The notes: generated by a model from the sequence alone, not told the origin. Positions 23,070 through 45,608 are shown, counted from the stretch's first letter. The stretch is 64,000 bases of DNA from Ranitomeya imitator (GCF_032444005.1 NC_091289.1:16120001-16184000), one strand, 5' to 3'. A program made the numbers and translations.

Positions 23070-23583
23070 TGAGGCAACCTTTGGCCAATATTGTGGGCGG
23101 TGATTGCTTGTAGAACTACTGATCTCAGCAGGACAGATATCTATATCATTGGATGAATACACCAATACTGGAAGAGGGACAGAGAGGGAGGATTCTGGAT
23201 AATGTGGATTCTGCTCTAAATATCGTCGAGTTGCATTTTATCTGTTTTTACTGTGAAACCTGTTCGACCGCTTTATTGAACCTTGTCTTGCCCAGGTCTC
23301 ACTTGTGCCCTGGCGGCGGAAAGAGGACCTGATGAAATAATTATAAGAGCACCAACATAGCAGCCACGTGGGTCTTCAGCATGTCGAGGTGGCGGTGGGT
23401 GATGGGCACAAAAACAGATGCCCAGGCAGGATCCATGCATCTAAACGGAGCTGTCAGACATTCAGACCTCCCAACTGTCCCGTATCCAACGGGGCAGTCC
23501 TGATTTTGAGAGTCTGTCATGGGCAGTACCTTATTTTTCCCACCCTGCAGAGCCACATATATCTCCACCCACAAAGCCTCACA

Positions 23584-24802
23584 CCAGTCATTGGACGTGG
23601 TATATCTCGATTTTTCCAAAGCGTTTGATACCATGCCGCACAAGAGGTTGGTACACAAAATGAGAATGCTTGGTCTGGGGGAAAATGTGTGTAAATGGGT
23701 TAGTAACTGGCTTAGTGATAGAAAGCAGAGGGTGGTTATAAATGGTATAGTCTCTAACTGGGTCGCTGTGACCAGTGGGGTACCGCAGGGGTCAGTATTG
23801 GGACCTGTTCTCTTCAACATATTCATTAATGATCTGGTAGAAGGTTTACACAGTAAAATATCGATATTTGCAGATGATACAAAACTATGTAAAGCAGTTA
23901 ATACAAGAGAAGATAGTATTCTGCTACAGATGGATCTGGATAAGTTGGAAACTTGGGCTGAAAGGTCGCAGATGAGGTTTAACAATGATAAATGTTAGGT
24001 TATACACATGGGAAGAAGGAATCAATGTCACCATTACACACTGAATGGGAAACCACTGGGTAAATCTGACAGGGAGAAGGACTTGGGGATCCTAGTTAAT
24101 GATAAACTTACCTGGAGCAGCCAGTGCCAGGCAGCAGCTGCCAAGGCAAACAGGATCATGGGGTGCATTAAAAGAGGTCTGGATACACATGATGAGAGCA
24201 TTATACTGCCTCTGTACAAATCCCTAGTTAGACCGCACATGGAGTACTGTGTCCAGTTTTGGGCACCGGTGCTCAGGAAGGATATAATGGAACTAGAGAG
24301 AGTACAAAGGAGGGCAACAAAATTAATAAAGGGGATGGGAGAACTACAATACCCAGATAGATTAGCGAAATTAGGATTATTTAGTCTAGAAAAAAGACGA
24401 CTGAGGGGCGATCTAATAACCATGTATAAGTATATAAGGGGACAATACAAATATCTCGCTGAGGATCTGTTTATACCAAGGAAGGTGACGGGCACAAGGG
24501 GGCATTCTTTGCGTCTGGAGGAGAGAAGGTTTTTCCACCAACATAGAAGAGGATTCTTTACAGTTAGGGCAGTGAGAATCTGGAATTGCTTGCCTGAGGA
24601 GGTGGTGATGGCGAACTCAGTCGAGGGGTTCAAGAGAGGCCTGGATGTCTTCCTGGAGCAGAACAATATTGTATCATACAATTATTAGGTTCTGTAGAAG
24701 GACGTAGATCTGGGGATTTATTATAATGGAATATAGGCTGAACTGGATGGACAAATGTCTTTTTTCGGCCTTACTAACTATGTTACTATGTTACTATGTT
24801 AC
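23584..24802 (+). mobile_element. 5'-truncated CR1 LINE, young: C-terminal half of ORF2 reverse transcriptase plus 3' UTR
   Basis: YLDFSKAFD...[11 protein letters not shown]...FADDTKL...CVQFW...RRLRGDLI, interrupted only by one TAG at 23996-23998 (frame preserved). Ends in (TGTTACTA)n at 24771-24802. Confidence 0.95.
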
Positions 24803-27800
24803 CACATATATGGCTGCTCTGTGCGCACAGGACCTGTGATGAGGTCACAGGAGGGGAGGAGTCGGAGTCAGCAGCATTTAAAGGGTTAAAGAGCGGTCGG
24901 AGCTGCCGTTAGCGGCGGATGCCCTCTGTTTATCACAGCCGACACCCGTTGTGTGTGCGTGCTCAGCTCCTGAGCCTACGCCACACTCATGCACCCAGGG
25001 GTGCTGCTATCATGAAGCAAGTTGAATACTTTGCCTCAGGCGGCAGAGCATCCTTAAAGACAGGGGGCGGCAGAGCGGCAGTCAGAACACGTGGTGCCAA
25101 CTCTCCCTGTAATCCCTGCTCTGACACTTGGTGACAGTGCAGTGTCACAACAACCTAATGTGCGGCGTGCCCGGCAGGTGACTGTTACTTACCCGGGCTG
25201 AGGTGCAGAGGTGCCCAGTCTCCTGACCTGCTGGGACACACACATTGCTGGGAGTCGGACTTGTACTGATTTTACTACGTGTGGGAAGGCACCGTTTTGC
25301 AGTTCACCTCAGGCAGCAGAGAGGCTAGGTTCACCCCTGCATGCACCTGACATAGGATGTGCTATTACGTCCTATGTCGGGAATGGCTTAATGTAGTGCG
25401 TCCCGTAGAACACGCCCTGCTGATAGGAGTGACAGTAACAGCCCGATATAATAGTAACGGTCCATTTCCAGGAGGAACAATAGAGGTAAGGCACCATGGA
25501 GACTTCTGAGAACTAAATATGACAGCTCTGTAATTACATGCAGTTATTTACTGCTGCAGACATAGACGGCTCCTCTTTAAATGTTGTATCTAAGCCTTTG
25601 TTTTAGGATGAAACGCACACCCTATATATAAAGTTCTCTGAAGTAGACGCGACAATCACCAACTCATCATTTATATGGAGGGAAATTCCTCCGCCCTCTG
25701 TGTAACATTTTCTTTATTACACCTCAATATATTTTACACATGTCTGAGACTTCTCAGGGCCATACAGACAGGATATAACAATGCACATAGGCCCTAACAG
25801 CCACAGTCCCCCTAGTAACCAAGACTAGTCCTGTTCTTGGTGCCCATAGCAACCAATCAGAACACAGCTTTCATTTTTCCAGGGCAGATTATGAAATAAA
25901 AGCTGTGCTTTGATTGGTTGCTATGGGCAACGAGGCCTTTACCAAGCAAAATCCTCTAAATACTGCTACAGGTTGCAGCCGTTTGGGTATAGGGCCGGTG
26001 TTCGGCCTACTAAACACTTTTACATTTGTGCCAAAAACTCTGGAAAGTAAAGGGAATATCCCTGTGACAAGCTGCACAGGTGTAATGGCCCCCACTTCCA
26101 GGTGCCATATATAATCCTAATGTCTTGTTATGCGGCAGAGGGGATGTTGGGCCCCTTCTGGCACCGCTGCTATGGTGCAGCTGTACCCATTTTAGCTTAG
26201 TTGAAATGGCAGCCATTTTTCGGCATGTTTTTGACGCCACTTTGTTTATGAGGTGTTTTTTCTGCTTCGATTTATTCAGCAGTCATATTTGGAAGTCTCA
26301 AGGATTGATATCCTAATTGTGGGGGAAAAAAATGGGTGGGGGGGAAATAGCACCATGTGCACCATAGGCCGCGCTACACAGCTGAAATCAGCAAGAAGTT
26401 TATTACAAGAATATTTGAAGTAGATTTTCATTTGGATTTTGAAGCAGAATTCGCTCCAAAATCCACATAAAAAAACCTCACTTCAAATACTCTTGAAATA
26501 AGCATCACTTAATGGGTAAACGCGCATATAATGCGCACGGTGATGTTTTCCCACGTGGAAAAAGAAGCAACACGTCAATTCTTCAGGTGTTTTGGATTGA
26601 GGAAATGCTCCGTATTTGACTAATGAATCAATAGAAGCAGTAAAGGAAAACGCAAGTGAGCAATGATTAATGAACAGGGCCGTTCAGAGGAGAGCATTTT
26701 CATGCAGACACAGAAAGTTGCAGCGTGCGCTCGTCTTCTGTCCATTCAAGTCTATAGGTGCAGTAAAACATAATGTACATCCATGCTATATCCGATTTTT
26801 ACGGATACGTTGTCACTATTAATATACGAAACTGTTTTTGATCGTGTCCATTTTTTAACTATTGATTTATAAAAATGGATGCAATACGGATGTCAAAAAT
26901 GGACACATGGATGGAATACGGGTGAAAATCGGCCATTTTATCTGAATGAAAATAAGACGATTTTTCGTACACTCGCCTAAACCCAGCGTGGACGACCCAA
27001 GTTCACATCTTCATTGGGATAAGCCGAGCCATACTGATCAGCTGCTATGAGGTATTAGGCTATCAGCCGAGCCCTTGGATATTGGCCTTATACGTCCAGA
27101 GAAGTTTACATGTCAGAAGCCCCTCCAGACATTGGACACTGCTCTCAACAAAAAGGTAATAGCGGAACGTCTTGTTTTTAGACCCCCCCTCCCCCGCGTA
27201 ATTCTACATTTTGTGGTAGCATATGCCGTACAGTCATACATAATAATCTCTGTGCAAAACCAGATATATAATATGTCACAAAAATAATAAGCAAATGCGC
27301 TACATATAATGAATAGAACTGATATCTGGCTACTTATTTATCTGTCTAAATTAACAAATAAATTCCATGGTCAGTAACCTGCAGCATTCCAGCTGTTGCA
27401 AAACTACAAATCCCAGCATGCTGGCAGCTCTCTGCTGTATAGATTCTATATAAAAAAAATCTATCAACAGTATCAACAGTATAGCACATCTATNNNNNNN
27501 NNNNNNNNNNNNNNNNNNNNNNNNNNNNNNNNNNNNNNNNNNNNNNNNNNNNNNNNNNNNNNNNNNNNNNNNNNNNNNNNNNNNNNNNNNNNNNNNNNNN
27601 NNNNNNNNNNNNNNNNNNNNNNNNNNNNNNNNNNNNNNNNNNNNNNNNGGTAAGACCCAGATAGATAGCTTTGTTTTTTTTTTTTTTTTGTTTTTTTTAT
27701 AGAATCTTATTTATCTATAAAGCAGGGTCTGACCAGCATGCTGGGAGTTGTAGTTTTATAACAGGTGGACTACGGCAGGTTGTAAAACAACTTGTTGACT

Positions 27801-38340: not shown

Positions 38341-38894
38341 CCCAGTGCTTAAATAATACCACCATACAGTGCTCAAATTAATGTTACGCAGTGTCCAAAT
38401 AAATCCACCATTTACCACTCAAATAACATCAACATACAGTGGCCAATAAACCCACCATTTAGTACTAAACATATGCAGCTATACAGTGTCTAAATAATAC
38501 AACCACACAGTGATCAAGTGTGAGCTGCATTCACACATATGTAATAGGCGCTATATAATATGAATATATATTACTGCGATACATGTAATATAAGTATTTG
38601 TGTTGGTTTCAAGCTTTAGAGTCAGGCCCCTGTACAGGTTGCACACCCCTAATGTTTTGCATTTAACCACCTAAACCACATTGTAGCGCACTGGTTTGTC
38701 CGGTCTTCTGCATTGATTTTCAGGCTTTGTTGTATATTTACATTCCTTTCTCCTTTAGCAAAGTAATGACCCAAGAGAAGCTAAAAACGTGAGACAATTA
38801 TACCAGATATAGTCATGTTTGTTATTAGTTGTGAATAGAGTGGATTCATAAAATTATGTCTATCTTTGAACTCCCTTCACAGTTTATAGTACTA

Positions 38895-40750
38895 ACCCTG
38901 AGTTACCTCCTGTATTATACCTCAGAGCTGCACTCACTATTCTGCTGGTGCAGTCACTGTGTACATACATTACATTACTGATCCTGAGTTACATCCTGTA
39001 TTATACCCCAGAGCTGCACTCACTATTCTGCTGGTGCAGTCACTGTGTACATACATTACATTACTGATCCTGAGTTACATCCTGTATTATACCCCAGAGC
39101 TGCACTCACTATTCTGCTGGTGCAGTCACTGTGTACATACATTACATTACTGATCCTGAGTTACATCCTGTATTATACTCCAGAGCTGCACTCACTATTC
39201 TGCTGGTGCGGTCACTGTGTACATACATTACATTACTGAACCGGAGTTACCTCTTGTATTATACTCCAGAGCTGCACTCACTATTCTGCTGGTGCAGTCA
39301 CTGTGTACATACATTACATTACTGATCCTGAGTTACATCCTGTATTATACCCCAGAGCTGCACTCACTATTCTGCTGGTGCAGTCACTGTGTACATACAT
39401 TACATTACTGATCCTGAGTTACATCCTCTTTTATACTCCACAGCTGCACTCACTACTCTGCTGGTGCAGTCACTGTGTACATACATTACATTACTGATCC
39501 TGAGTTACATCCTGTATTATACTCCAGAGCTGCACTCGCTATTCTTCTGGTGCAGTCACTGTGTACATACATTACATTAGTGATCCTGAGTTACATCCTG
39601 TATTATACCCCAGAGCTGCACTCACTATTCTGCTGGTGCAGTCACTGTGTACATACATTACATTACTGATCCTGAGTTACATCCTGTATTATACCCCAGA
39701 GCTGCACTCACTATTCTGCTGGTGCAGTCACTGTGTACATATATTACATTACTGATCCTGAGTTACATCCTGTATTATACTCCAGAGCTGCATTCACTAT
39801 TCTGCTGGTGCAGTCACTGTGTATATACATTACATTACTGATCCTGAGTTACATCCTGTATTATACCCCAGAGCTGCGCTCACTATTCTGCTGGTGCAGT
39901 CACTGTGTACATACATTACATTACTGATCCTGAGTTACATCCTGTATTATACCCCAGAGCTGCACTCACTATTCTGCTGGTGCAGTCACTGTGTACATAC
40001 ATTACATTACTGATACTGAGTTACATCCTGTATTATACCCCAGAGCTGCGCTCACTATTCTGCTGGTGCAGTCACTGTGTACATACATTACATTACTGAT
40101 CCTGAGTTACATCCTGTATTATACCCCAGAGCTGCACTCACTATTCTGCTGGTGCAGTCACTGTGTACATACATTACATTACTGATCCTGAGTTACATCC
40201 TGTATTATACTCCAGAGCTGCACTCACTATTCTGCTGGTGCCGTCACTGTGTACATACATTACTGATCCTGAGTTACATCCTGTATTATACCCCAGAGCT
40301 GCGCTCACTATTCTGCTGGTGCAGTCACTGTGTATATACATTACATTACTGATCCTGAGTTACATCCTGTATTATACTCCAGAGCTGCGCTCACTATTCT
40401 GCTGGTGCAGTCACTGTGTACATACATTACATTACTGATCCTGAGTTACATCCTGTATTATACTCCACAGCTGCGCTCAGTATTCTGCTGGTGCAGTCAC
40501 TGTGTACATACATTACATTACTGATCCTGAGTTACATCCTGTATTATACCCCAGAGCTGCACTCACTATTCTGCTGGTGCAGTCACTGTGTACATACATT
40601 ACATTACTGATCCTGAGTTACATCCTGTATTATACCCCAGAGCTGCACTCACTATTCTGCTGGTGCAGTCACTGTGTACATACATTACATTACTGATCCT
40701 GAGTTACATCTTGTATTATACTCCACAGCTGCGCTCAGTATTCTGCTGGT
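38895..40750. repeat. 86-bp tandem repeat, about 21 copies
   Basis: Unit ATCCTGAGTTACATCCTGTATTATACCCCAGAGCTGCACTCACTATTCTGCTGGTGCAGTCACTGTGTACATACATTACATTACTG; track ORF starts are spaced exactly 86 nt apart. Confidence 0.97.
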
Positions 40751-41087
40751 GCACTTCTGGTATTCTGTTCACCAGAAAGGAAAATCTCGGTGAGAATGTT
40801 AAAGGTCAGTACCAGACTAGAGTGTGGGTGGCTTAAAATATATAGAAGTGGAATATTGGCATTGTACCAAATAGTTAACTGGGTCAATCAGTAATAAGGG
40901 GGAAATATTTTCTCACTGACCTACTTTTATTTGTTTTTCTTTGAGGTTTATAACTGAATCACTGATTTCCCTCTTGAGGAGCGACTCTACAAGGGACCCC
41001 GCTTGCCCCCTGTTGGGACTGTCACTGCCTCCTCTCCAAGAAATCAAAGATCAGTAAGGAAAGTGAGATCATTTCCAATGGTTGGAA

Positions 41088-41279
41088 GGCTGCGGTCACA
41101 CTATCAGTATTTGGTCAGTATTTTACATCAGTATTTGTAGCCAAAACCAGGAGTGGGTGATAAATGCAGAAGTGATGCAGATGTTTCTATTACACTTTTC
41201 CTCTATTTGTTCCACTCCTGGTTTTGGCTACAAATACTGATGTAAAATACTGACCAAATACTGCTAGTGTGACGGCAGC
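41088..41279. mobile_element. PIF/Harbinger-type MITE, inverted near-identical copy of 27892-28084
   Basis: GGCTGCGGTCACACTATCAG ... GCTAGTGTGACGGCAGC. Confidence 0.75.
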
Positions 41280-41415
41280 AGAAGTCTGACATCAGGAGTG
41301 AGTGACGTAGATGACGGCGTCATAAGAGATGAGCTGCAGAGAATAATGACTGACAGCCGCACGGAGTCATGAAGGATAAGTCGCGTCTAATCAACATGGT
41401 GGGTTTCTATGAGTA

Positions 41416-41490
41416 GGTGAGTGCAAATCTGGATGTTGGTAATACGGCCGATGTGATTTATCTGGACTTTGCAAAGGCATTTGATACTGT
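41416..41490 (+). mobile_element. Short CR1 reverse-transcriptase fragment (SANLDVGNTADVIYLDFAKAFDTV) fused directly to the 31-bp array
   Basis: The translation matches the YLDFSKAFD motif of the CR1 copy at 23584. Confidence 0.8.
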
Positions 41491-43899
41491 ACTGGGAGCA
41501 GTGGGGACCACAGAGATCTGTGCTGGGAGAAGTGGGGACCGTAGGGATCTGTACTGGGAGCAGTGGGGACCACAGAGATCTGTGCTGGGAGAAGTGGGGA
41601 CCACAGAGATCTGTGCTGGGAGAAGTGGGGACCACAGAGATCTGTGCTGGGAGAAGTGGGGGCCACAAGTATCTGTAATGGGAGCAGTGGGGACCGTAGG
41701 GATCTGTACTGAGAGCAGTGGGTGGGGACCACAAGGATCTGTACTGGGAGCAGTGGGGATCACAAGGATCTGTACTGGGAGCAGTGGGGACCACAATGAT
41801 CTGTGCTGGGAGCAGTGGGGACCATAAGGATCTGTATTGGGAGCAGTGGGGACCACACAAATCTGTATTGGGAGCAGTGGGGACCACAAGGATCTGTACT
41901 GGGAACAGTGGGGACCACATGGATCTGTGCTGGAAGCAGTGGGGACCACAGGGATCTGTGCTGGGAGCAGTAGGGACCACAAGGATCTGTACTGGAAGCA
42001 GTGGGGACCACAAGGATCTGTACTGGAAGCAGTGGGGACCACAGGGATCTGTGCTGGGAGCAGTGGGGACCACAGGGATCTGTACTGGGAGCAGTGGGGA
42101 CCGCAGGGATCTGTACTGGGAGCAGTGGGGTCCGCCGGGATCTGTACTAGAAGCAATGGGGACCACAGGGATCTGTGCTGGGAGCAGTGGGGACCACAGG
42201 GATCTGTACTGGGAGCAGTGGGGACCGCAGGGATCTGTACTGGGAGAAGTGGGGTCCGCCGGGATCTGTACTGGGAGCAGTGGGGTCCGCCGGGATCTGT
42301 ACTAGAAGCAATGGGGACCACAGGGATCTGTGCTGGGAGCAGTGGGGACCACAGGGATCTGTACTGGGAGCAGTGGGGACCACAGGGATCTGTACTGGGA
42401 GCAGTGGGGACCGCAGGGATCTGTACTGGGAGCAGTGGGGTCCGCCGGGATCTGTACTAGAAGCAATGGGGACCACAGGGATCTGTGCTGGGAGCAGTGG
42501 GGACCACAGGGATCTGTACTGGGAGCAGTGGGGACCGCAGGGATCTGTACTGGGAGCAGTGGGGACCGCAGGGATCTGTACTGGGAGCAGTGGGGTCCGC
42601 CGGGATCTGTACTAAAAGCAATGGGGACCACAGGGATCTGTGCTGGGAGCAGTGGGGACCACAGGGATCTGTACTGGGAGCAGTGGGGACCGCAGGGATC
42701 TGTACTGGGAGCAGTGGGGACCGCAGGGATCTGTACTGGGAGCAGTGGGGACCACAGGGATCTGTGCTGGGAGCAGTGGGGACCATAAGGATCTGTACGG
42801 GGAGCAGTGAGGACCACACGGATCTATACTGGGAGCAGTGTGGACCACAAGGATCTGTACTGGGAGCAGTGGGGACCACAGGGATTTGTGTTGGGAGATG
42901 TGGGGACCACAAGGATCTGTACTGTGAGCAGTAGGGACCACAAGGATCTGTACTGGGAGCAGTGGGGACCACAAGGATCAGTACTGTGAGCAGTGGGGAC
43001 CACAGGGATCTGTGCTGGGAGCAGTGGGGACCACAGGGATCTGTACTGGGAGCAGTGGGGACCACAGGGATCTGTACTGGGAACAGTGTGGACCACAAGG
43101 ATCTGTACTGGGAGCAGTGGGGACCACAGGGATCTGTGCTGGGAGATGTGGGGACCACAGGGATCTGTACTGGGAGCAGTGGGGACCGCAGGGATGTGTA
43201 CTGGGAGCAGTGGGGACCGCAGGGATCTGTACTGGGAGCAGTGGGGTCCGCCGGGATCTGTACTGGGAGCAGTGGGGACCACAGGGATCTGTGCTGGGAG
43301 ATGTGGGGACCGCTGGTATCTGTACTGGGAGCAGTGGGGACCATAAGGATCTGTACGGGGAGCAATGAGGACCACACGGATCTATACTGGGAGCAGTGGG
43401 GACCACAGGGATCTGTATTGGCAGCAGTGGGGACCACAAGGATCTGTACTGGGAGCAGTGGGGTCCGCCGGGATCTGTACTGGGAGCAGTGGGGACCACA
43501 GGGATCTGTGCTGGGAGATGTGGGGACCGCTGGTATCTGTACTGGGAGCAGTGGGGACCATAAGGATCTGTACGGGGAGCAGTGAGGACCACACGGATCT
43601 ATACTGGGAGCAGTGGGGACCACAGGGATCTGTATTGGCAGCAGTGGGGACCACAAGGATCTGTAATGGGAGCAGTGGGGTCCGCCGGGATCTGTACTGG
43701 GAGCAGTGGGGACCACAGGGACCTGTGCTGGGAGCAGTGGGGACCGCAGGGATCTGTACTGGGAGCAGTGGGGACCGCAGGGATCTGTAATGGGAGCAGT
43801 GGGGTCCGCCGGGATCTGTAATGGGAGCAGTGGGGTCCGCCGGGATCTGTACTGGGAGCAGTGGGGACTATAAGGATTTGTACTAGGAGCAGTGGGGAC
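41488..43899 (+). repeat. 31-bp minisatellite (about 78 copies) derived from the CR1 RT motif [10 protein letters not shown]
   Basis: Unit AGCAGTGGGGACCACAGGGATCTGTACTGGG; higher-order periods of 155 bp and 217 bp are visible. Confidence 0.97.
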
Positions 43900-45608
43900 A
43901 GCAAATAAAATTTAGATGAGGGACACGTTACTTCCCTTCAATCTCGGGAGATCTCCAGTGGTCGGACCCCCAGTACATTCTGTACATTGGTCCCGGATCT
44001 TGTGCAATGACGGGTTTTGGACTCTACAAGGAAGTGTCCATTCGTGGGGTTTTCAGGACCAGCAGAGCAGCTCTGTGCAGACATGTCAGAGTTTCCTTTG
44101 GGGAACAATGTGCAGCATTACGTTCACTGTCTTATCTATATGTCAGTGGTTTCTGTTATTTTACTCTTTGTTTGTCTTTGTAACCGGTTAAAATGGCTTC
44201 TTTATCCGCGTGCTGGCGTGACATATCAGACATCATTTTTTTAACTATATCACAGTGTCCGTCATTTTCTATTATATTCTCCTGCCTAATAGAGCCTCTG
44301 ATGCAGATGACAACGCACAAGGATCCTATGAAAAGCTCTGTCATTTATTTACATAGCCTGGAGCCACCTACTTCAAGTGGGGGAAGGAGATCAATTCTGT
44401 GCAGAAGGAATTGGTCCCCTTCCCCCTCTGGTAGCTGACAATATAGTCTCTTCTTTGTGCTTAACCGCAGCACAAAGGGAATCCATGGAGACAAAAAATG
44501 ATGGTGTTTTTTTTAAGACAAGAAACTGCAATTTTTTATACTTTTGTCATATATGGATTTATGGAACAAGCTCTTGAATCGAGGTAATTATGGCTCATAT
44601 GGAGGCTGAGAAGCATAAAGACACCCGGATGAGGCATCCTATTATGTGTAACGCACGGATTGGTTTCATTACCTGGGTGTCATAGCTGCAACGAAGAAGG
44701 AAAAGTTTTGTGTGGCAGTAATCCATGAGCTGGGTGAGTCAGTGATGCACTCGGAAGCTCAGGTCCTGACATACGTTTGCACAATTTTCGATCCACGTTT
44801 GACTTTTTTTGTCTAAAATAAAGGTTAAGTGCTAAAGTAAAGATCATTTTTTTTTACATTGCGCAAAATCAGTCAGCTCCAACTTTTTGCAAAGGGAAGA
44901 GGGAGCGCGCAGAGAAATTGATCATAATTTACTCCACAAAAGTGGGGGAAGTTACGACAAAAATGTAATGCTTCATCTCTCCTGCGGGGGCGCTGCACGC
45001 CCTGTGTACAACGTATCTTCACTGCAATGGGCCCCATTTCTCCCCTGGTATTTCTGTAGCACCTGCAGCTACGCACGGGGGCACAAGTAAGGGACCAGCA
45101 CATTTCTGACATAAGGTGTGACTCCCCAGATATGTGGTCACTCTCGTTCTAGCTCCTACGGCTCATTTCTAGCATATCACTTAAAAAAAACAAAGCCGAA
45201 AATAATAGTTTGTAGATTACAGGGTTTGCATGTTCTAAAATACTTTATTAGGGGGTCTATGCAGAGAGGGGGTCATCCCCAGATAATGTCTCTTTATCTG
45301 GAGGACTCTGCACGTCCGGGTAGTGTACGGTCCGCCCGTAGATTTTGTGTAATACTTCCTCCCTCCTGCGGGGGTGCTGCAGAAGAGATGAACACTTAGC
45401 GCTCAATTCATTATTTCACTTTTTTTTTTCTTTTTATTTATCTTGTGCTATTTGTTAAAGTTCTTCAAAACAGTTGACGTGTGAATTTTGTGTAGAATCA
45501 AAAATGCTTTTTTTGTTTAAACTTTTTGTGCAGTTTTTTAGTGTAAAAAAAATCATATCTTCTACTAAAAAGTTGGAAAATTTGTGCCTGCAGAACACAA
45601 TAGCGCAC

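What the first reader, a model, noticed from the sequence alone, without database searches (positions are those of the whole stretch)
41416..43899. A 2.4-kb minisatellite born from the CR1 reverse-transcriptase [10 protein letters not shown] motif
Seen: the 31-bp unit AGCAGTGGGG-ACCACAGGGATCTGTACTGGG aligns with the CR1 copy in this window at 23771-23802 (ACCAGTGGGGTACCGCAGGGGTCAGTATTGGG) at 26 of 32 positions. Four of the five substitutions are synonymous (CCG/CCA, GGG/GGA, TCA/TCT, TTG/CTG), plus a 1-nt gap. The array starts directly after a CR1 RT fragment (IYLDFAKAFDTV), joined through the microhomology GATACTGTAC/GATCTGTAC, which skips roughly 60 intervening codons. It has 5-unit (155 bp) and 7-unit (217 bp) higher-order periods. 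Established: SGVPQGS is the conserved motif B of non-LTR reverse transcriptases. Inference: a different CR1 subfamily underwent a microhomology-mediated deletion or template jump, then amplified this one motif about 78 times. This would be a direct snapshot of a satellite arising from LINE coding sequence.
Basis: partly seen in the sequence, partly recalled or inferred. Interest (0 to 1): 0.8.

Follow-up and report, generated by a model that had tools for sequence, protein, structure and literature searches.

The report
Minisatellite born inside a CR1 retrotransposon
A 2.4-kb run of 31-base repeats in this frog-like genome grew out of the codons for a conserved reverse-transcriptase motif of an old CR1 jumping gene; other copies of the same element hold 1 to over 100 units at that spot, so it is a clear but ordinary example of a transposon turning into a tandem repeat.

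Summary
Window 41487-43899 is a 31-bp x 77.7 tandem array with 5-unit and 7-unit higher-order blocks. It starts right after a CR1 reverse-transcriptase (RT) fragment ending ...IYLDFAKAFDTV.

Other copies of the same CR1 subfamily carry the unit at that exact codon position, between colinear RT flanks. They hold 1, 2, 3, 4, 5, 7, 9, 15, 19, 40 and 100+ units.

All 29 array loci examined are CR1-linked. The unit junction occurs at least 1,600 times in the 5.96-Gb genome.

The array arose in situ in a CR1 lineage, most likely spread by retrotransposition, and grew locally at each locus. The AFDTV-to-array junction skips 45 codons, not about 60. It is unique in the genome, so it is a later private deletion.

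The 3' junction is also present in a related species (about 95% identity).

Two other first-reader notes of this scan report the same kind of array elsewhere in this genome.

Transposon-derived minisatellites are well documented, so this is a new member of a known kind.

The parts
41282..41490 (+). 5' remnant of an old CR1 LINE (RT motif A region, ...GFYE*VSANLDVGNTADVIYLDFAKAFDTV). It is 78-89% identical to other genomic copies of the array-bearing CR1 subfamily. There is no CR1 homology further upstream.
   Evidence: blastn of family copies against the window; translation; genome search
41481..41490 (+). Deletion joint GATACTGTAC. CR1 codons D-T-V are fused to the unit's GATCTGTAC (6 exact shared bases CTGTAC, 9 of 10 with one indel). 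The joint removes the 135 nt (45 codons) that separate AFDTV from motif B in other copies, plus an unknown number of units. It is private to this locus.
   Evidence: pattern search finds this joint once in 5.96 Gb at up to 3 mismatches
41487..43899 (+). 31-bp minisatellite, 77.7 units. The commonest units are AGCAGTGGGGACC[A/G]CAGGGATCTGT[A/G]CTGGG. This is motif B codons S-S-G-(V)-P-Q-G-S-V-L-G with one T missing.
   Evidence: TRF; unit table; alignment to CR1 motif B
42058..42770 (+). Block with a 5-unit (155-bp) higher-order period (units 18-40). It includes the locus-private variant GTCCGCCGGG.
   Evidence: lag-5 identity 30.1/31, lag-10 30.2/31; variant counts
43236..43886 (+). Block with a 7-unit (217-bp) higher-order period (units 56-76).
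   Evidence: lag-7 identity 28.9/31 against about 26 at other lags
43900..44250 (.). 3' flank. It is single-copy DNA, not CR1. The array-to-flank joint is also present in contigs of independent runs and in a related species at about 95% identity.
   Evidence: own-genome search gives 1 match; no CR1 homology downstream in the window; contigs in X1, X3 and X4
23519..24810 (+). Separate 5'-truncated CR1 copy of another lineage, about 63-69% nt identity to the array-bearing family.
   Evidence: Pfam RVT_1 E=3.8e-23; blastn

Best explanation
The array is a transposon-derived minisatellite with no indication of function.

Origin. In an old CR1 LINE subfamily, the 32 nt that encode RT motif B ([11 protein letters not shown]) were duplicated in tandem. 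One unit lost a T (GGGGTACC became GGGGACC), and that 31-nt unit became the dominant repeat. Either event frameshifts the RT, so the lineage was non-autonomous.

Spread. Copies carrying short arrays were still dispersed to many chromosomes. The most likely route is retrotransposition in trans by intact relatives.

Growth. After insertion, each locus expanded, contracted and homogenised its own array by slippage or unequal exchange. This produced locus-private variants and higher-order blocks.

The window copy. It then lost the 135 nt between AFDTV and the array through a joint at the microhomology GAT(A)CTGTAC. It also lost the whole CR1 3' part.

What is shown and what is inferred. Shown: the in-situ position, the graded series of array sizes, the CR1 context, the private variants, the uniqueness of the joint, and the presence of the 3' joint in a relative. 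Inferred: a single origin, mobilisation in trans, and slippage, unequal exchange and microhomology-mediated deletion as the mechanisms.
For: (1) In-situ series. 23 informative of the 29 other family copies found through the upstream flank show the following at the motif-B position, between ...NGTFSKWDIV and GPILFNLFINDL...ADDTK. Nine are intact single T-bearing units. Three are single T-less units. One has an internal deletion. The rest are arrays of 2, 2, 2, 3, 4, 5, 7, 9, 40 and at least 37 units.

(2) Large arrays. Of the 12 examined (25-110 units, window included), 9 have the canonical 5' RT flank and the window has its deleted version. Three have the canonical 3' flank and one has it distally. 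Two start inside the array.

(3) Transitional forms. These are arrays whose first unit still has the T (L063, L065, L064, L066, L068) and mixed T-bearing/T-less arrays (L062, L067). All lie between both RT flanks.

(4) Shared derived state. Internal units end CTGGG. The last unit before ACCGATTC keeps the single-copy state CTAGG in nearly all loci. This points to one origin.

(5) Subfamily marker AGAGT[C/T]GTC. It is C in 13 of 15 arrays of 5 or more units, against 1 of 9 intact singles (Fisher p=0.0005).

(6) The family is a true CR1. It has a 3' hairpin plus (ATGTAACT)n, followed by different unique flanks in different copies (hallmark as described in PMC4316615).

(7) Local growth. Each array has its own amplified variants: window TCCGCCGGG x10, C1b ACAGCAGGG x19, C10 GCCGCAGGG x17, C2a ACTGCAGGG x25. 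The window also has higher-order blocks.

(8) The joint is unique in the genome and the 3' flank is single-copy.

(9) Abundance. There are 1,600 unit-to-unit junction matches at up to 2 mismatches, against 0 for the reversed control.

(10) Relatives. The 3' junction lies in a contig of organism C at about 95% identity. Organisms C and D have very high depth on the unit, with loose ends that read on into the CR1 downstream sequence.
Against: Retrotransposition of array-bearing copies is inferred, not shown.

Six of the 12 large arrays end in non-CR1 DNA. Target-primed reverse transcription does not produce that, so later rearrangements or insertions must be invoked for these loci.

The C/T marker sits in a CpG, so parallel decay blurs the subfamily signal. 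Short arrays carry both states.

The internal-versus-terminal difference rests robustly on one position only (CTGGG against CTAGG).

The copies sampled were chosen by similarity to the window, so the proportions are not genome-wide frequencies.

No structure-based driver of expansion was found. Hairpin z-scores are about 0, and there is no canonical G4 motif.
Confidence: 0.85

Rival explanations
1. Recurrent hot spot. The motif-B codons are intrinsically prone to tandem duplication, and arrays arose independently in many already-inserted CR1 copies instead of being inherited from an array-bearing master.
For: Arrays clearly keep growing locally after insertion. Array-bearing copies carry both states of the flank marker. 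The G-rich unit gives dense long-loop G4 motifs, 59 per kb with loops up to 9 nt.
Against: Nearly all arrays share the same internal unit type (CTGGG, mostly T-less), while single copies and terminal units read CTAGG. Independent births would start with CTAGG internal units. The 9 intact T-bearing copies sampled are all single. The long-array copies share a flank marker (p=0.0005).
Confidence: 0.1
2. A CR1 copy at this locus first suffered a microhomology-mediated deletion or template jump from AFDTV to motif B. The single motif was then amplified about 78-fold here.
For: The joint lies at a 9/10 microhomology. A template jump during reverse transcription cannot be excluded for the joint itself.
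Against: The same array type exists at dozens of loci with the 45 codons intact. The joint reads GTAC|TGGGAGCAG, which continues into a unit-to-unit junction of the internal type that exists only in arrays. The joint is unique in the genome.
Confidence: 0.04
3. Chance resemblance, or an unrelated satellite that inserted into CR1 copies.
For: None beyond the G-richness of the unit.
Against: The unit is colinear, codon by codon, with single-copy RT sequence in intact copies (29/32 to L054). Both flanks are colinear RT. There were 0 hits for 16 shuffled units against 1 real hit, exactly at motif B.
Confidence: 0.01

Closest known systems
Transposon-derived minisatellites (reviews PMC9659126 and PMC6947457; the first cites 7,276 TE-derived minisatellites in the human genome)
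   Same: A short internal TE segment is duplicated in tandem. The seed array is dispersed with the TE and expands locally.
   Different: Here the seed is the catalytic-domain motif B of the RT ORF of a CR1 in an amphibian-type genome, and the full 1-to-100+ unit series is preserved. In the reviews most listed sources are non-autonomous TEs such as SINEs (Alu, B1) and MITEs.
Tandem repeats from LINE ORF2: chicken HinfI repeat (CR1 3' UTR plus part of ORF2), PROsat of Phodopus (L1 ORF2), Pvc20 of harbour seal (L1 ORF2), all as listed in PMC9659126
   Same: LINE coding sequence is converted into tandem repeats. CR1 is a documented source.
   Different: By the reviews' account those repeats embed or resemble stretches of the element, and the reviews class them as satellite DNA. 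Here the unit is only 31 bp (about 10 codons), the arrays sampled are at most 3.4 kb, and they stay inside the element.
SVA VNTR and mouse L1 5' monomers (own knowledge, not tested here)
   Same: A retrotransposed element carries an internal variable tandem array, so that array length varies between copies.
   Different: Those arrays lie in non-coding parts of active elements. Here the array destroys the RT ORF, and the lineage must depend on relatives for mobility.
G-quadruplex-forming human minisatellites CEB1/CEB25 (own knowledge)
   Same: The unit is G-rich, with G-runs spaced so that a G4 with a 9-nt loop is possible, as described for CEB25.
   Different: There is no canonical G4 motif (loops up to 7 nt: 0 hits), and G4 formation or instability was not tested.

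Membership tests
CR1 LINE (host element of the array) | Reverse-transcriptase domain with motifs A (YLDFxKAFD), B ([11 protein letters not shown]) and C (FADDTK) in order | tested here: met
   Window CR1 ORF matches Pfam RVT_1 at E=3.8e-23. The array-bearing family aligns to it over about 960 nt at 63-69% identity and reads ...YLDFAKAFDTVPH...[motif B or array]...LFINDL...ADDTK.
CR1 LINE (host element of the array) | 3' UTR hairpin followed by an octamer microsatellite (PMC4316615) | tested here: met
   Family copies end GGTTGAAC...TTCAACC followed by (ATGTAACT)n and then unrelated flanks (L054, L043, L056, L042).
CR1 LINE (host element of the array) | Dispersed, mostly 5'-truncated insertions with target-site duplications | tested here: inconclusive
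   Copies lie on at least 10 chromosomes, with homology limited to the element and variable 5' limits. TSDs were not examined, and many copies are also broken at the 3' side.
Minisatellite | Head-to-tail array of a 10-100 bp unit spanning about 0.5-30 kb | tested here: met
   31 bp x 77.7 = 2.4 kb. Other loci hold 25-110 units.
Minisatellite | Length polymorphism between individuals (VNTR behaviour) | not tested
No long reads spanning the array were examined.
TE-derived tandem repeat | Unit colinear with a single-copy stretch of the TE, and arrays at the homologous position inside TE copies | tested here: met
   The largest arrays seen are about 3.4 kb (C4, C1b). All 29 arrays examined are still attached to CR1 sequence. 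Sampling was limited.
G4-forming minisatellite (CEB1/CEB25-like) | Four G-runs of at least 3 within G4 loop limits on one strand | tested here: inconclusive
   No motifs with loops up to 7 nt. 143 overlapping motifs (59 per kb) with loops up to 9 nt, against 0.08 per kb in the rest of the window. No biophysical test was done.

The most novel reading that the evidence does not exclude
A frameshifted CR1 lineage acted as a vehicle. Over a long period it seeded one G-rich 31-bp minisatellite at dozens of loci in several related frog species. The dispersed copies would then form a dated fossil series: 1, 2, 3 ... 100+ units, T-bearing to T-less units, then array-mediated deletions. From such a series, birth, growth and decay rates of a minisatellite could be measured directly. 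Long-loop G4 formation by the motif-B codons would be the possible driver of expansion.
Probability: 0.3. Interest if true: 0.55.

Novelty: new member of a known kind. Interest (0 to 1): 0.4.

Why it matters
The conversion of transposons into tandem repeats is well established. What is rare is to see every intermediate stage. In this genome they are all preserved as separate insertions of one CR1 subfamily:
- the intact single-copy motif;
- a first duplication that still has the original T;
- the 1-nt-deleted unit taking over;
- kilobase arrays with higher-order structure;
- array-associated deletions.

That makes the family a convenient natural system for measuring how minisatellites are born, spread and grow. 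It also flags a source of structural variation and assembly difficulty in large anuran genomes. It does not reveal a new kind of element or mechanism.

Tried and rejected
As a result, TSDs, full element ends and the nature of the non-CR1 3' flanks could not be examined. A smaller request later worked.

2. My first working claim, that all arrays lack the T and that the deletion therefore preceded the duplication, was rejected after pattern searches. T-bearing units occur inside arrays at 7 or more loci. The duplication therefore probably came first.

3. My first estimate of a 180-bp skipped stretch was wrong. It is 135 nt.

4. A hairpin-driven slippage idea found no support. DNA folding of three units gives z = -0.05 and -0.16 on the two strands. 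Canonical G4 motifs are absent.

5. Comparing group ages by pairwise distance is not interpretable, because the groups were sampled by different criteria.

6. Literature searches for the unit sequence found nothing. A 2026 CR1 survey (PMC13343379) does not mention tandem repeats.

7. No direct repeat flanking the original 32-nt segment was seen that could explain the first duplication. This was by inspection only.

Full report
**1. What is in the window**

TRF finds one array at 41487-43899, with period 31, 77.7 copies, 88% matches and no indels. Splitting it on the GCAGTGGGG anchor gives 76 spacings of 31 nt and one of 35 nt.

The commonest units are AGCAGTGGGGACCGCAGGGATCTGTACTGGG and its CpG-decayed form with ACCACAGGG.

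Two higher-order blocks are present. Units 18-40 (42058-42770) repeat with a 5-unit period: lag-5 identity is 30.1/31 and lag-10 is 30.2/31, against about 27.4-28.3 at the other lags from 1 to 8. Units 56-76 (43236-43886) repeat with a 7-unit period: 28.9/31 against about 26.

Immediately upstream, 41282-41490 translates as ...MKDKSRLINMVGFYE*VSANLDVGNTADVIYLDFAKAFDTV and runs directly into the array. This fragment abuts a 68-nt-armed palindromic element at 41089-41279. No CR1 homology lies further upstream or anywhere downstream of the array in the window. The 3' flank (43890-44250) is single-copy in the 5.96-Gb genome.

**2.

The unit aligns to the window's other CR1 copy at 23771-23802 with 26/32 matches, that is 5 substitutions and one 1-nt gap. 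That copy is an RVT_1 reverse transcriptase (E=3.8e-23), and the matched stretch encodes [11 protein letters not shown]. Four of the five substitutions are synonymous.

The match is specific. In the roughly 122 kb (both strands) of window sequence outside the array, it is the only match to the unit with up to 7 errors. Sixteen shuffled units found nothing.

**3. The decisive evidence: other copies of the same CR1 subfamily**

A genome search with the upstream flank returned 29 other loci at 81-89% identity. Reading on from AFDTV in each gave these states at the motif-B position:
- Nine copies have one intact unit, for example AGCAGTGGGGTACCACAGGGATCTGTGCTAGG in L054.
- Three copies have one unit without the T.
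- One copy has an internal deletion.
- Ten copies have arrays of 2, 2, 2, 3, 4, 5, 7, 9, 40 and at least 37 units.
- Six copies are broken before the motif.

In every informative case the unit or array sits between ...INGTFSKWDIV and GPILFNLFINDLVDG...ADDTK. That is exactly where [10 protein letters not shown] belongs.

The distance from AFDTV to the motif is 132-140 nt in nine family copies (five at exactly 135) and 135 nt in the window's own CR1. That is 45 codons, not about 60.

**4. The large arrays elsewhere**

A search with five units found arrays on most chromosomes. I examined 12 large arrays of 25-110 units, counting the window's own:
- Nine have the canonical 5' RT flank.
- The window has the RT flank with the 45 codons missing.
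- Two begin inside the array next to non-CR1 DNA.
- Three have the canonical 3' RT flank, one has CR1 3' sequence about 0.9 kb further on, and two loci end before the array does.
- Six, including the window, end in non-CR1 DNA.

A 35-nt unit-to-unit junction pattern matches 1,600 times at up to 2 mismatches, against 0 for the reversed control. The T-less form matches 488 times exactly.

**5. The host element is a true CR1**

Family copies end with a hairpin (GGTTGAAC...TTCAACC) and (ATGTAACT)n, followed by different unique flanks. A 3' hairpin plus an octamer microsatellite is the CR1 hallmark (PMC4316615).

The family is only 63-69% identical at nucleotide level to the window's other CR1.

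**6. Order of events**

I first thought the T deletion preceded the duplication, because all arrays in the first sample were T-less. Pattern searches corrected this:
- Five loci have a T-bearing first unit followed by T-less units (L063, L065, L064, L066, L068).
- Two loci have mixed arrays (L062, L067).
- All seven lie between both RT flanks.

So a 32-nt duplication most likely came first, and the T-less 31-nt unit then took over.

Nearly all arrays share one derived feature. Internal units end CTGGG, while the last unit before ACCGATTC keeps the single-copy state CTAGG. A flank marker (AGAGT[C/T]GTC) is C in 13 of 15 arrays of 5 or more units but in only 1 of 9 intact singles (Fisher p=0.0005).

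Together these favour a single origin followed by dispersal of array-bearing copies. Because the RT is frameshifted, dispersal would have to be in trans. That step is inferred, since TSDs and empty sites were not examined. The marker lies in a CpG, which weakens it.

**7. Local growth**

Each large array has its own amplified variants:
- the window has TCCGCCGGG x10;
- C1b has ACAGCAGGG x19;
- C10 has GCCGCAGGG x17;
- C2a has ACTGCAGGG x25 and GTCCTGGG x14.

With the higher-order blocks in the window, this shows that most of the length was gained in place, by slippage or unequal exchange. The mechanism is inferred from the pattern.

**8. The window's joint**

The sequence GCATTTGATACTGTAC|TGGGAGCAGTGGGGACC occurs once in the genome at up to 3 mismatches. 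It fuses the CR1's GATACTGTAC to a unit's GATCTGTAC and continues into an internal-type unit junction that exists only in arrays.

The array therefore predates the joint. The joint is best read as a later microhomology-associated deletion, although a template jump at insertion cannot be excluded. The missing CR1 3' part requires at least one further rearrangement.

**9. Other runs and species**

Contigs from run X1 (same species label) and reads or contigs from X3 cover the array-to-unique 3' junction with 1 and 0 differences. A 1,553-nt contig of organism C covers it with 24 differences and 3 gaps, about 95% identity. The locus, with its array end, is therefore shared with a relative.

In organisms C and D the unit has very high summed depth, and loose ends read on into the CR1 downstream sequence. 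Depth from contigs is not a copy number.

**10. Possible driver of expansion**

Three units fold no better than shuffles on either strand (z = -0.05 and -0.16). There are no canonical G4 motifs. With loops up to 9 nt the array has 59 motif starts per kb, against 0.08 per kb elsewhere in the window. This is a lead only.

**11. Comparison with what is known**

Reviews list many transposon-to-tandem-repeat conversions. They include chicken CR1 giving the HinfI repeat and centromeric repeats, L1 ORF2 giving PROsat and Pvc20, and thousands of TE-derived human minisatellites (PMC9659126; PMC6947457).

No paper holds this unit sequence. Two other first-reader notes of this scan describe a minisatellite born from the CR1 SGVPQGS/PQG motif elsewhere in this genome. 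That agrees with the multi-locus picture, but I did not check those loci.

**12. Verdict**

The derivation from CR1 motif B is strongly supported. The proposed sequence of events and the single-locus framing are not.

The feature is a clean, unusually complete example of a known process. I rate it a new member of a known kind, of moderate interest.

Noticed in passing
window 38890-40753: A second large tandem array lies about 0.7 kb upstream of the minisatellite: 86-bp unit x 21.7 copies, 95% matches (also scored with a 253-bp period). Its origin is unknown.
   Followed up: partly
window 41089-41279: Palindromic MITE-like element (68-nt arms, 97% complementary, 55-nt loop) directly abutting the 5' end of the CR1 fragment. 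The same element is inserted inside another copy of the CR1 family (L034, between AFDTVPH and the motif).
   Followed up: partly
G000:C1:1174327736-1174588030 (L062 is one copy): The same 4-unit mixed T-bearing/T-less CR1 array recurs about six times at 43-64 kb spacing. This suggests a tandem segmental duplication carrying the element.
   Followed up: no
G000:C2:206336627-206361840: Three array loci within 25 kb with parallel hit patterns, probably another local segmental duplication of an array-bearing copy.
   Followed up: no
G000:C2:205897081-205900235 (L021) and G000:C2:174942727-174945881 (L013): Here the 31-bp array is followed directly by a different tandem repeat (units like AGGCCTCTCCTATATTACACGGGATGG, and a roughly 47-bp CCCTAGA-type repeat). 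These are composite tandem-repeat loci.
   Followed up: no
large arrays C4, C2a, C1a, C7, C3 (loci L005-L024) and the window: Half of the large arrays end in non-CR1 DNA on the 3' side, which is unusual for LINE copies. Either the arrays promote deletions or later insertions sit at their ends. Flanks beyond about 1.5 kb could not be fetched.
   Followed up: partly
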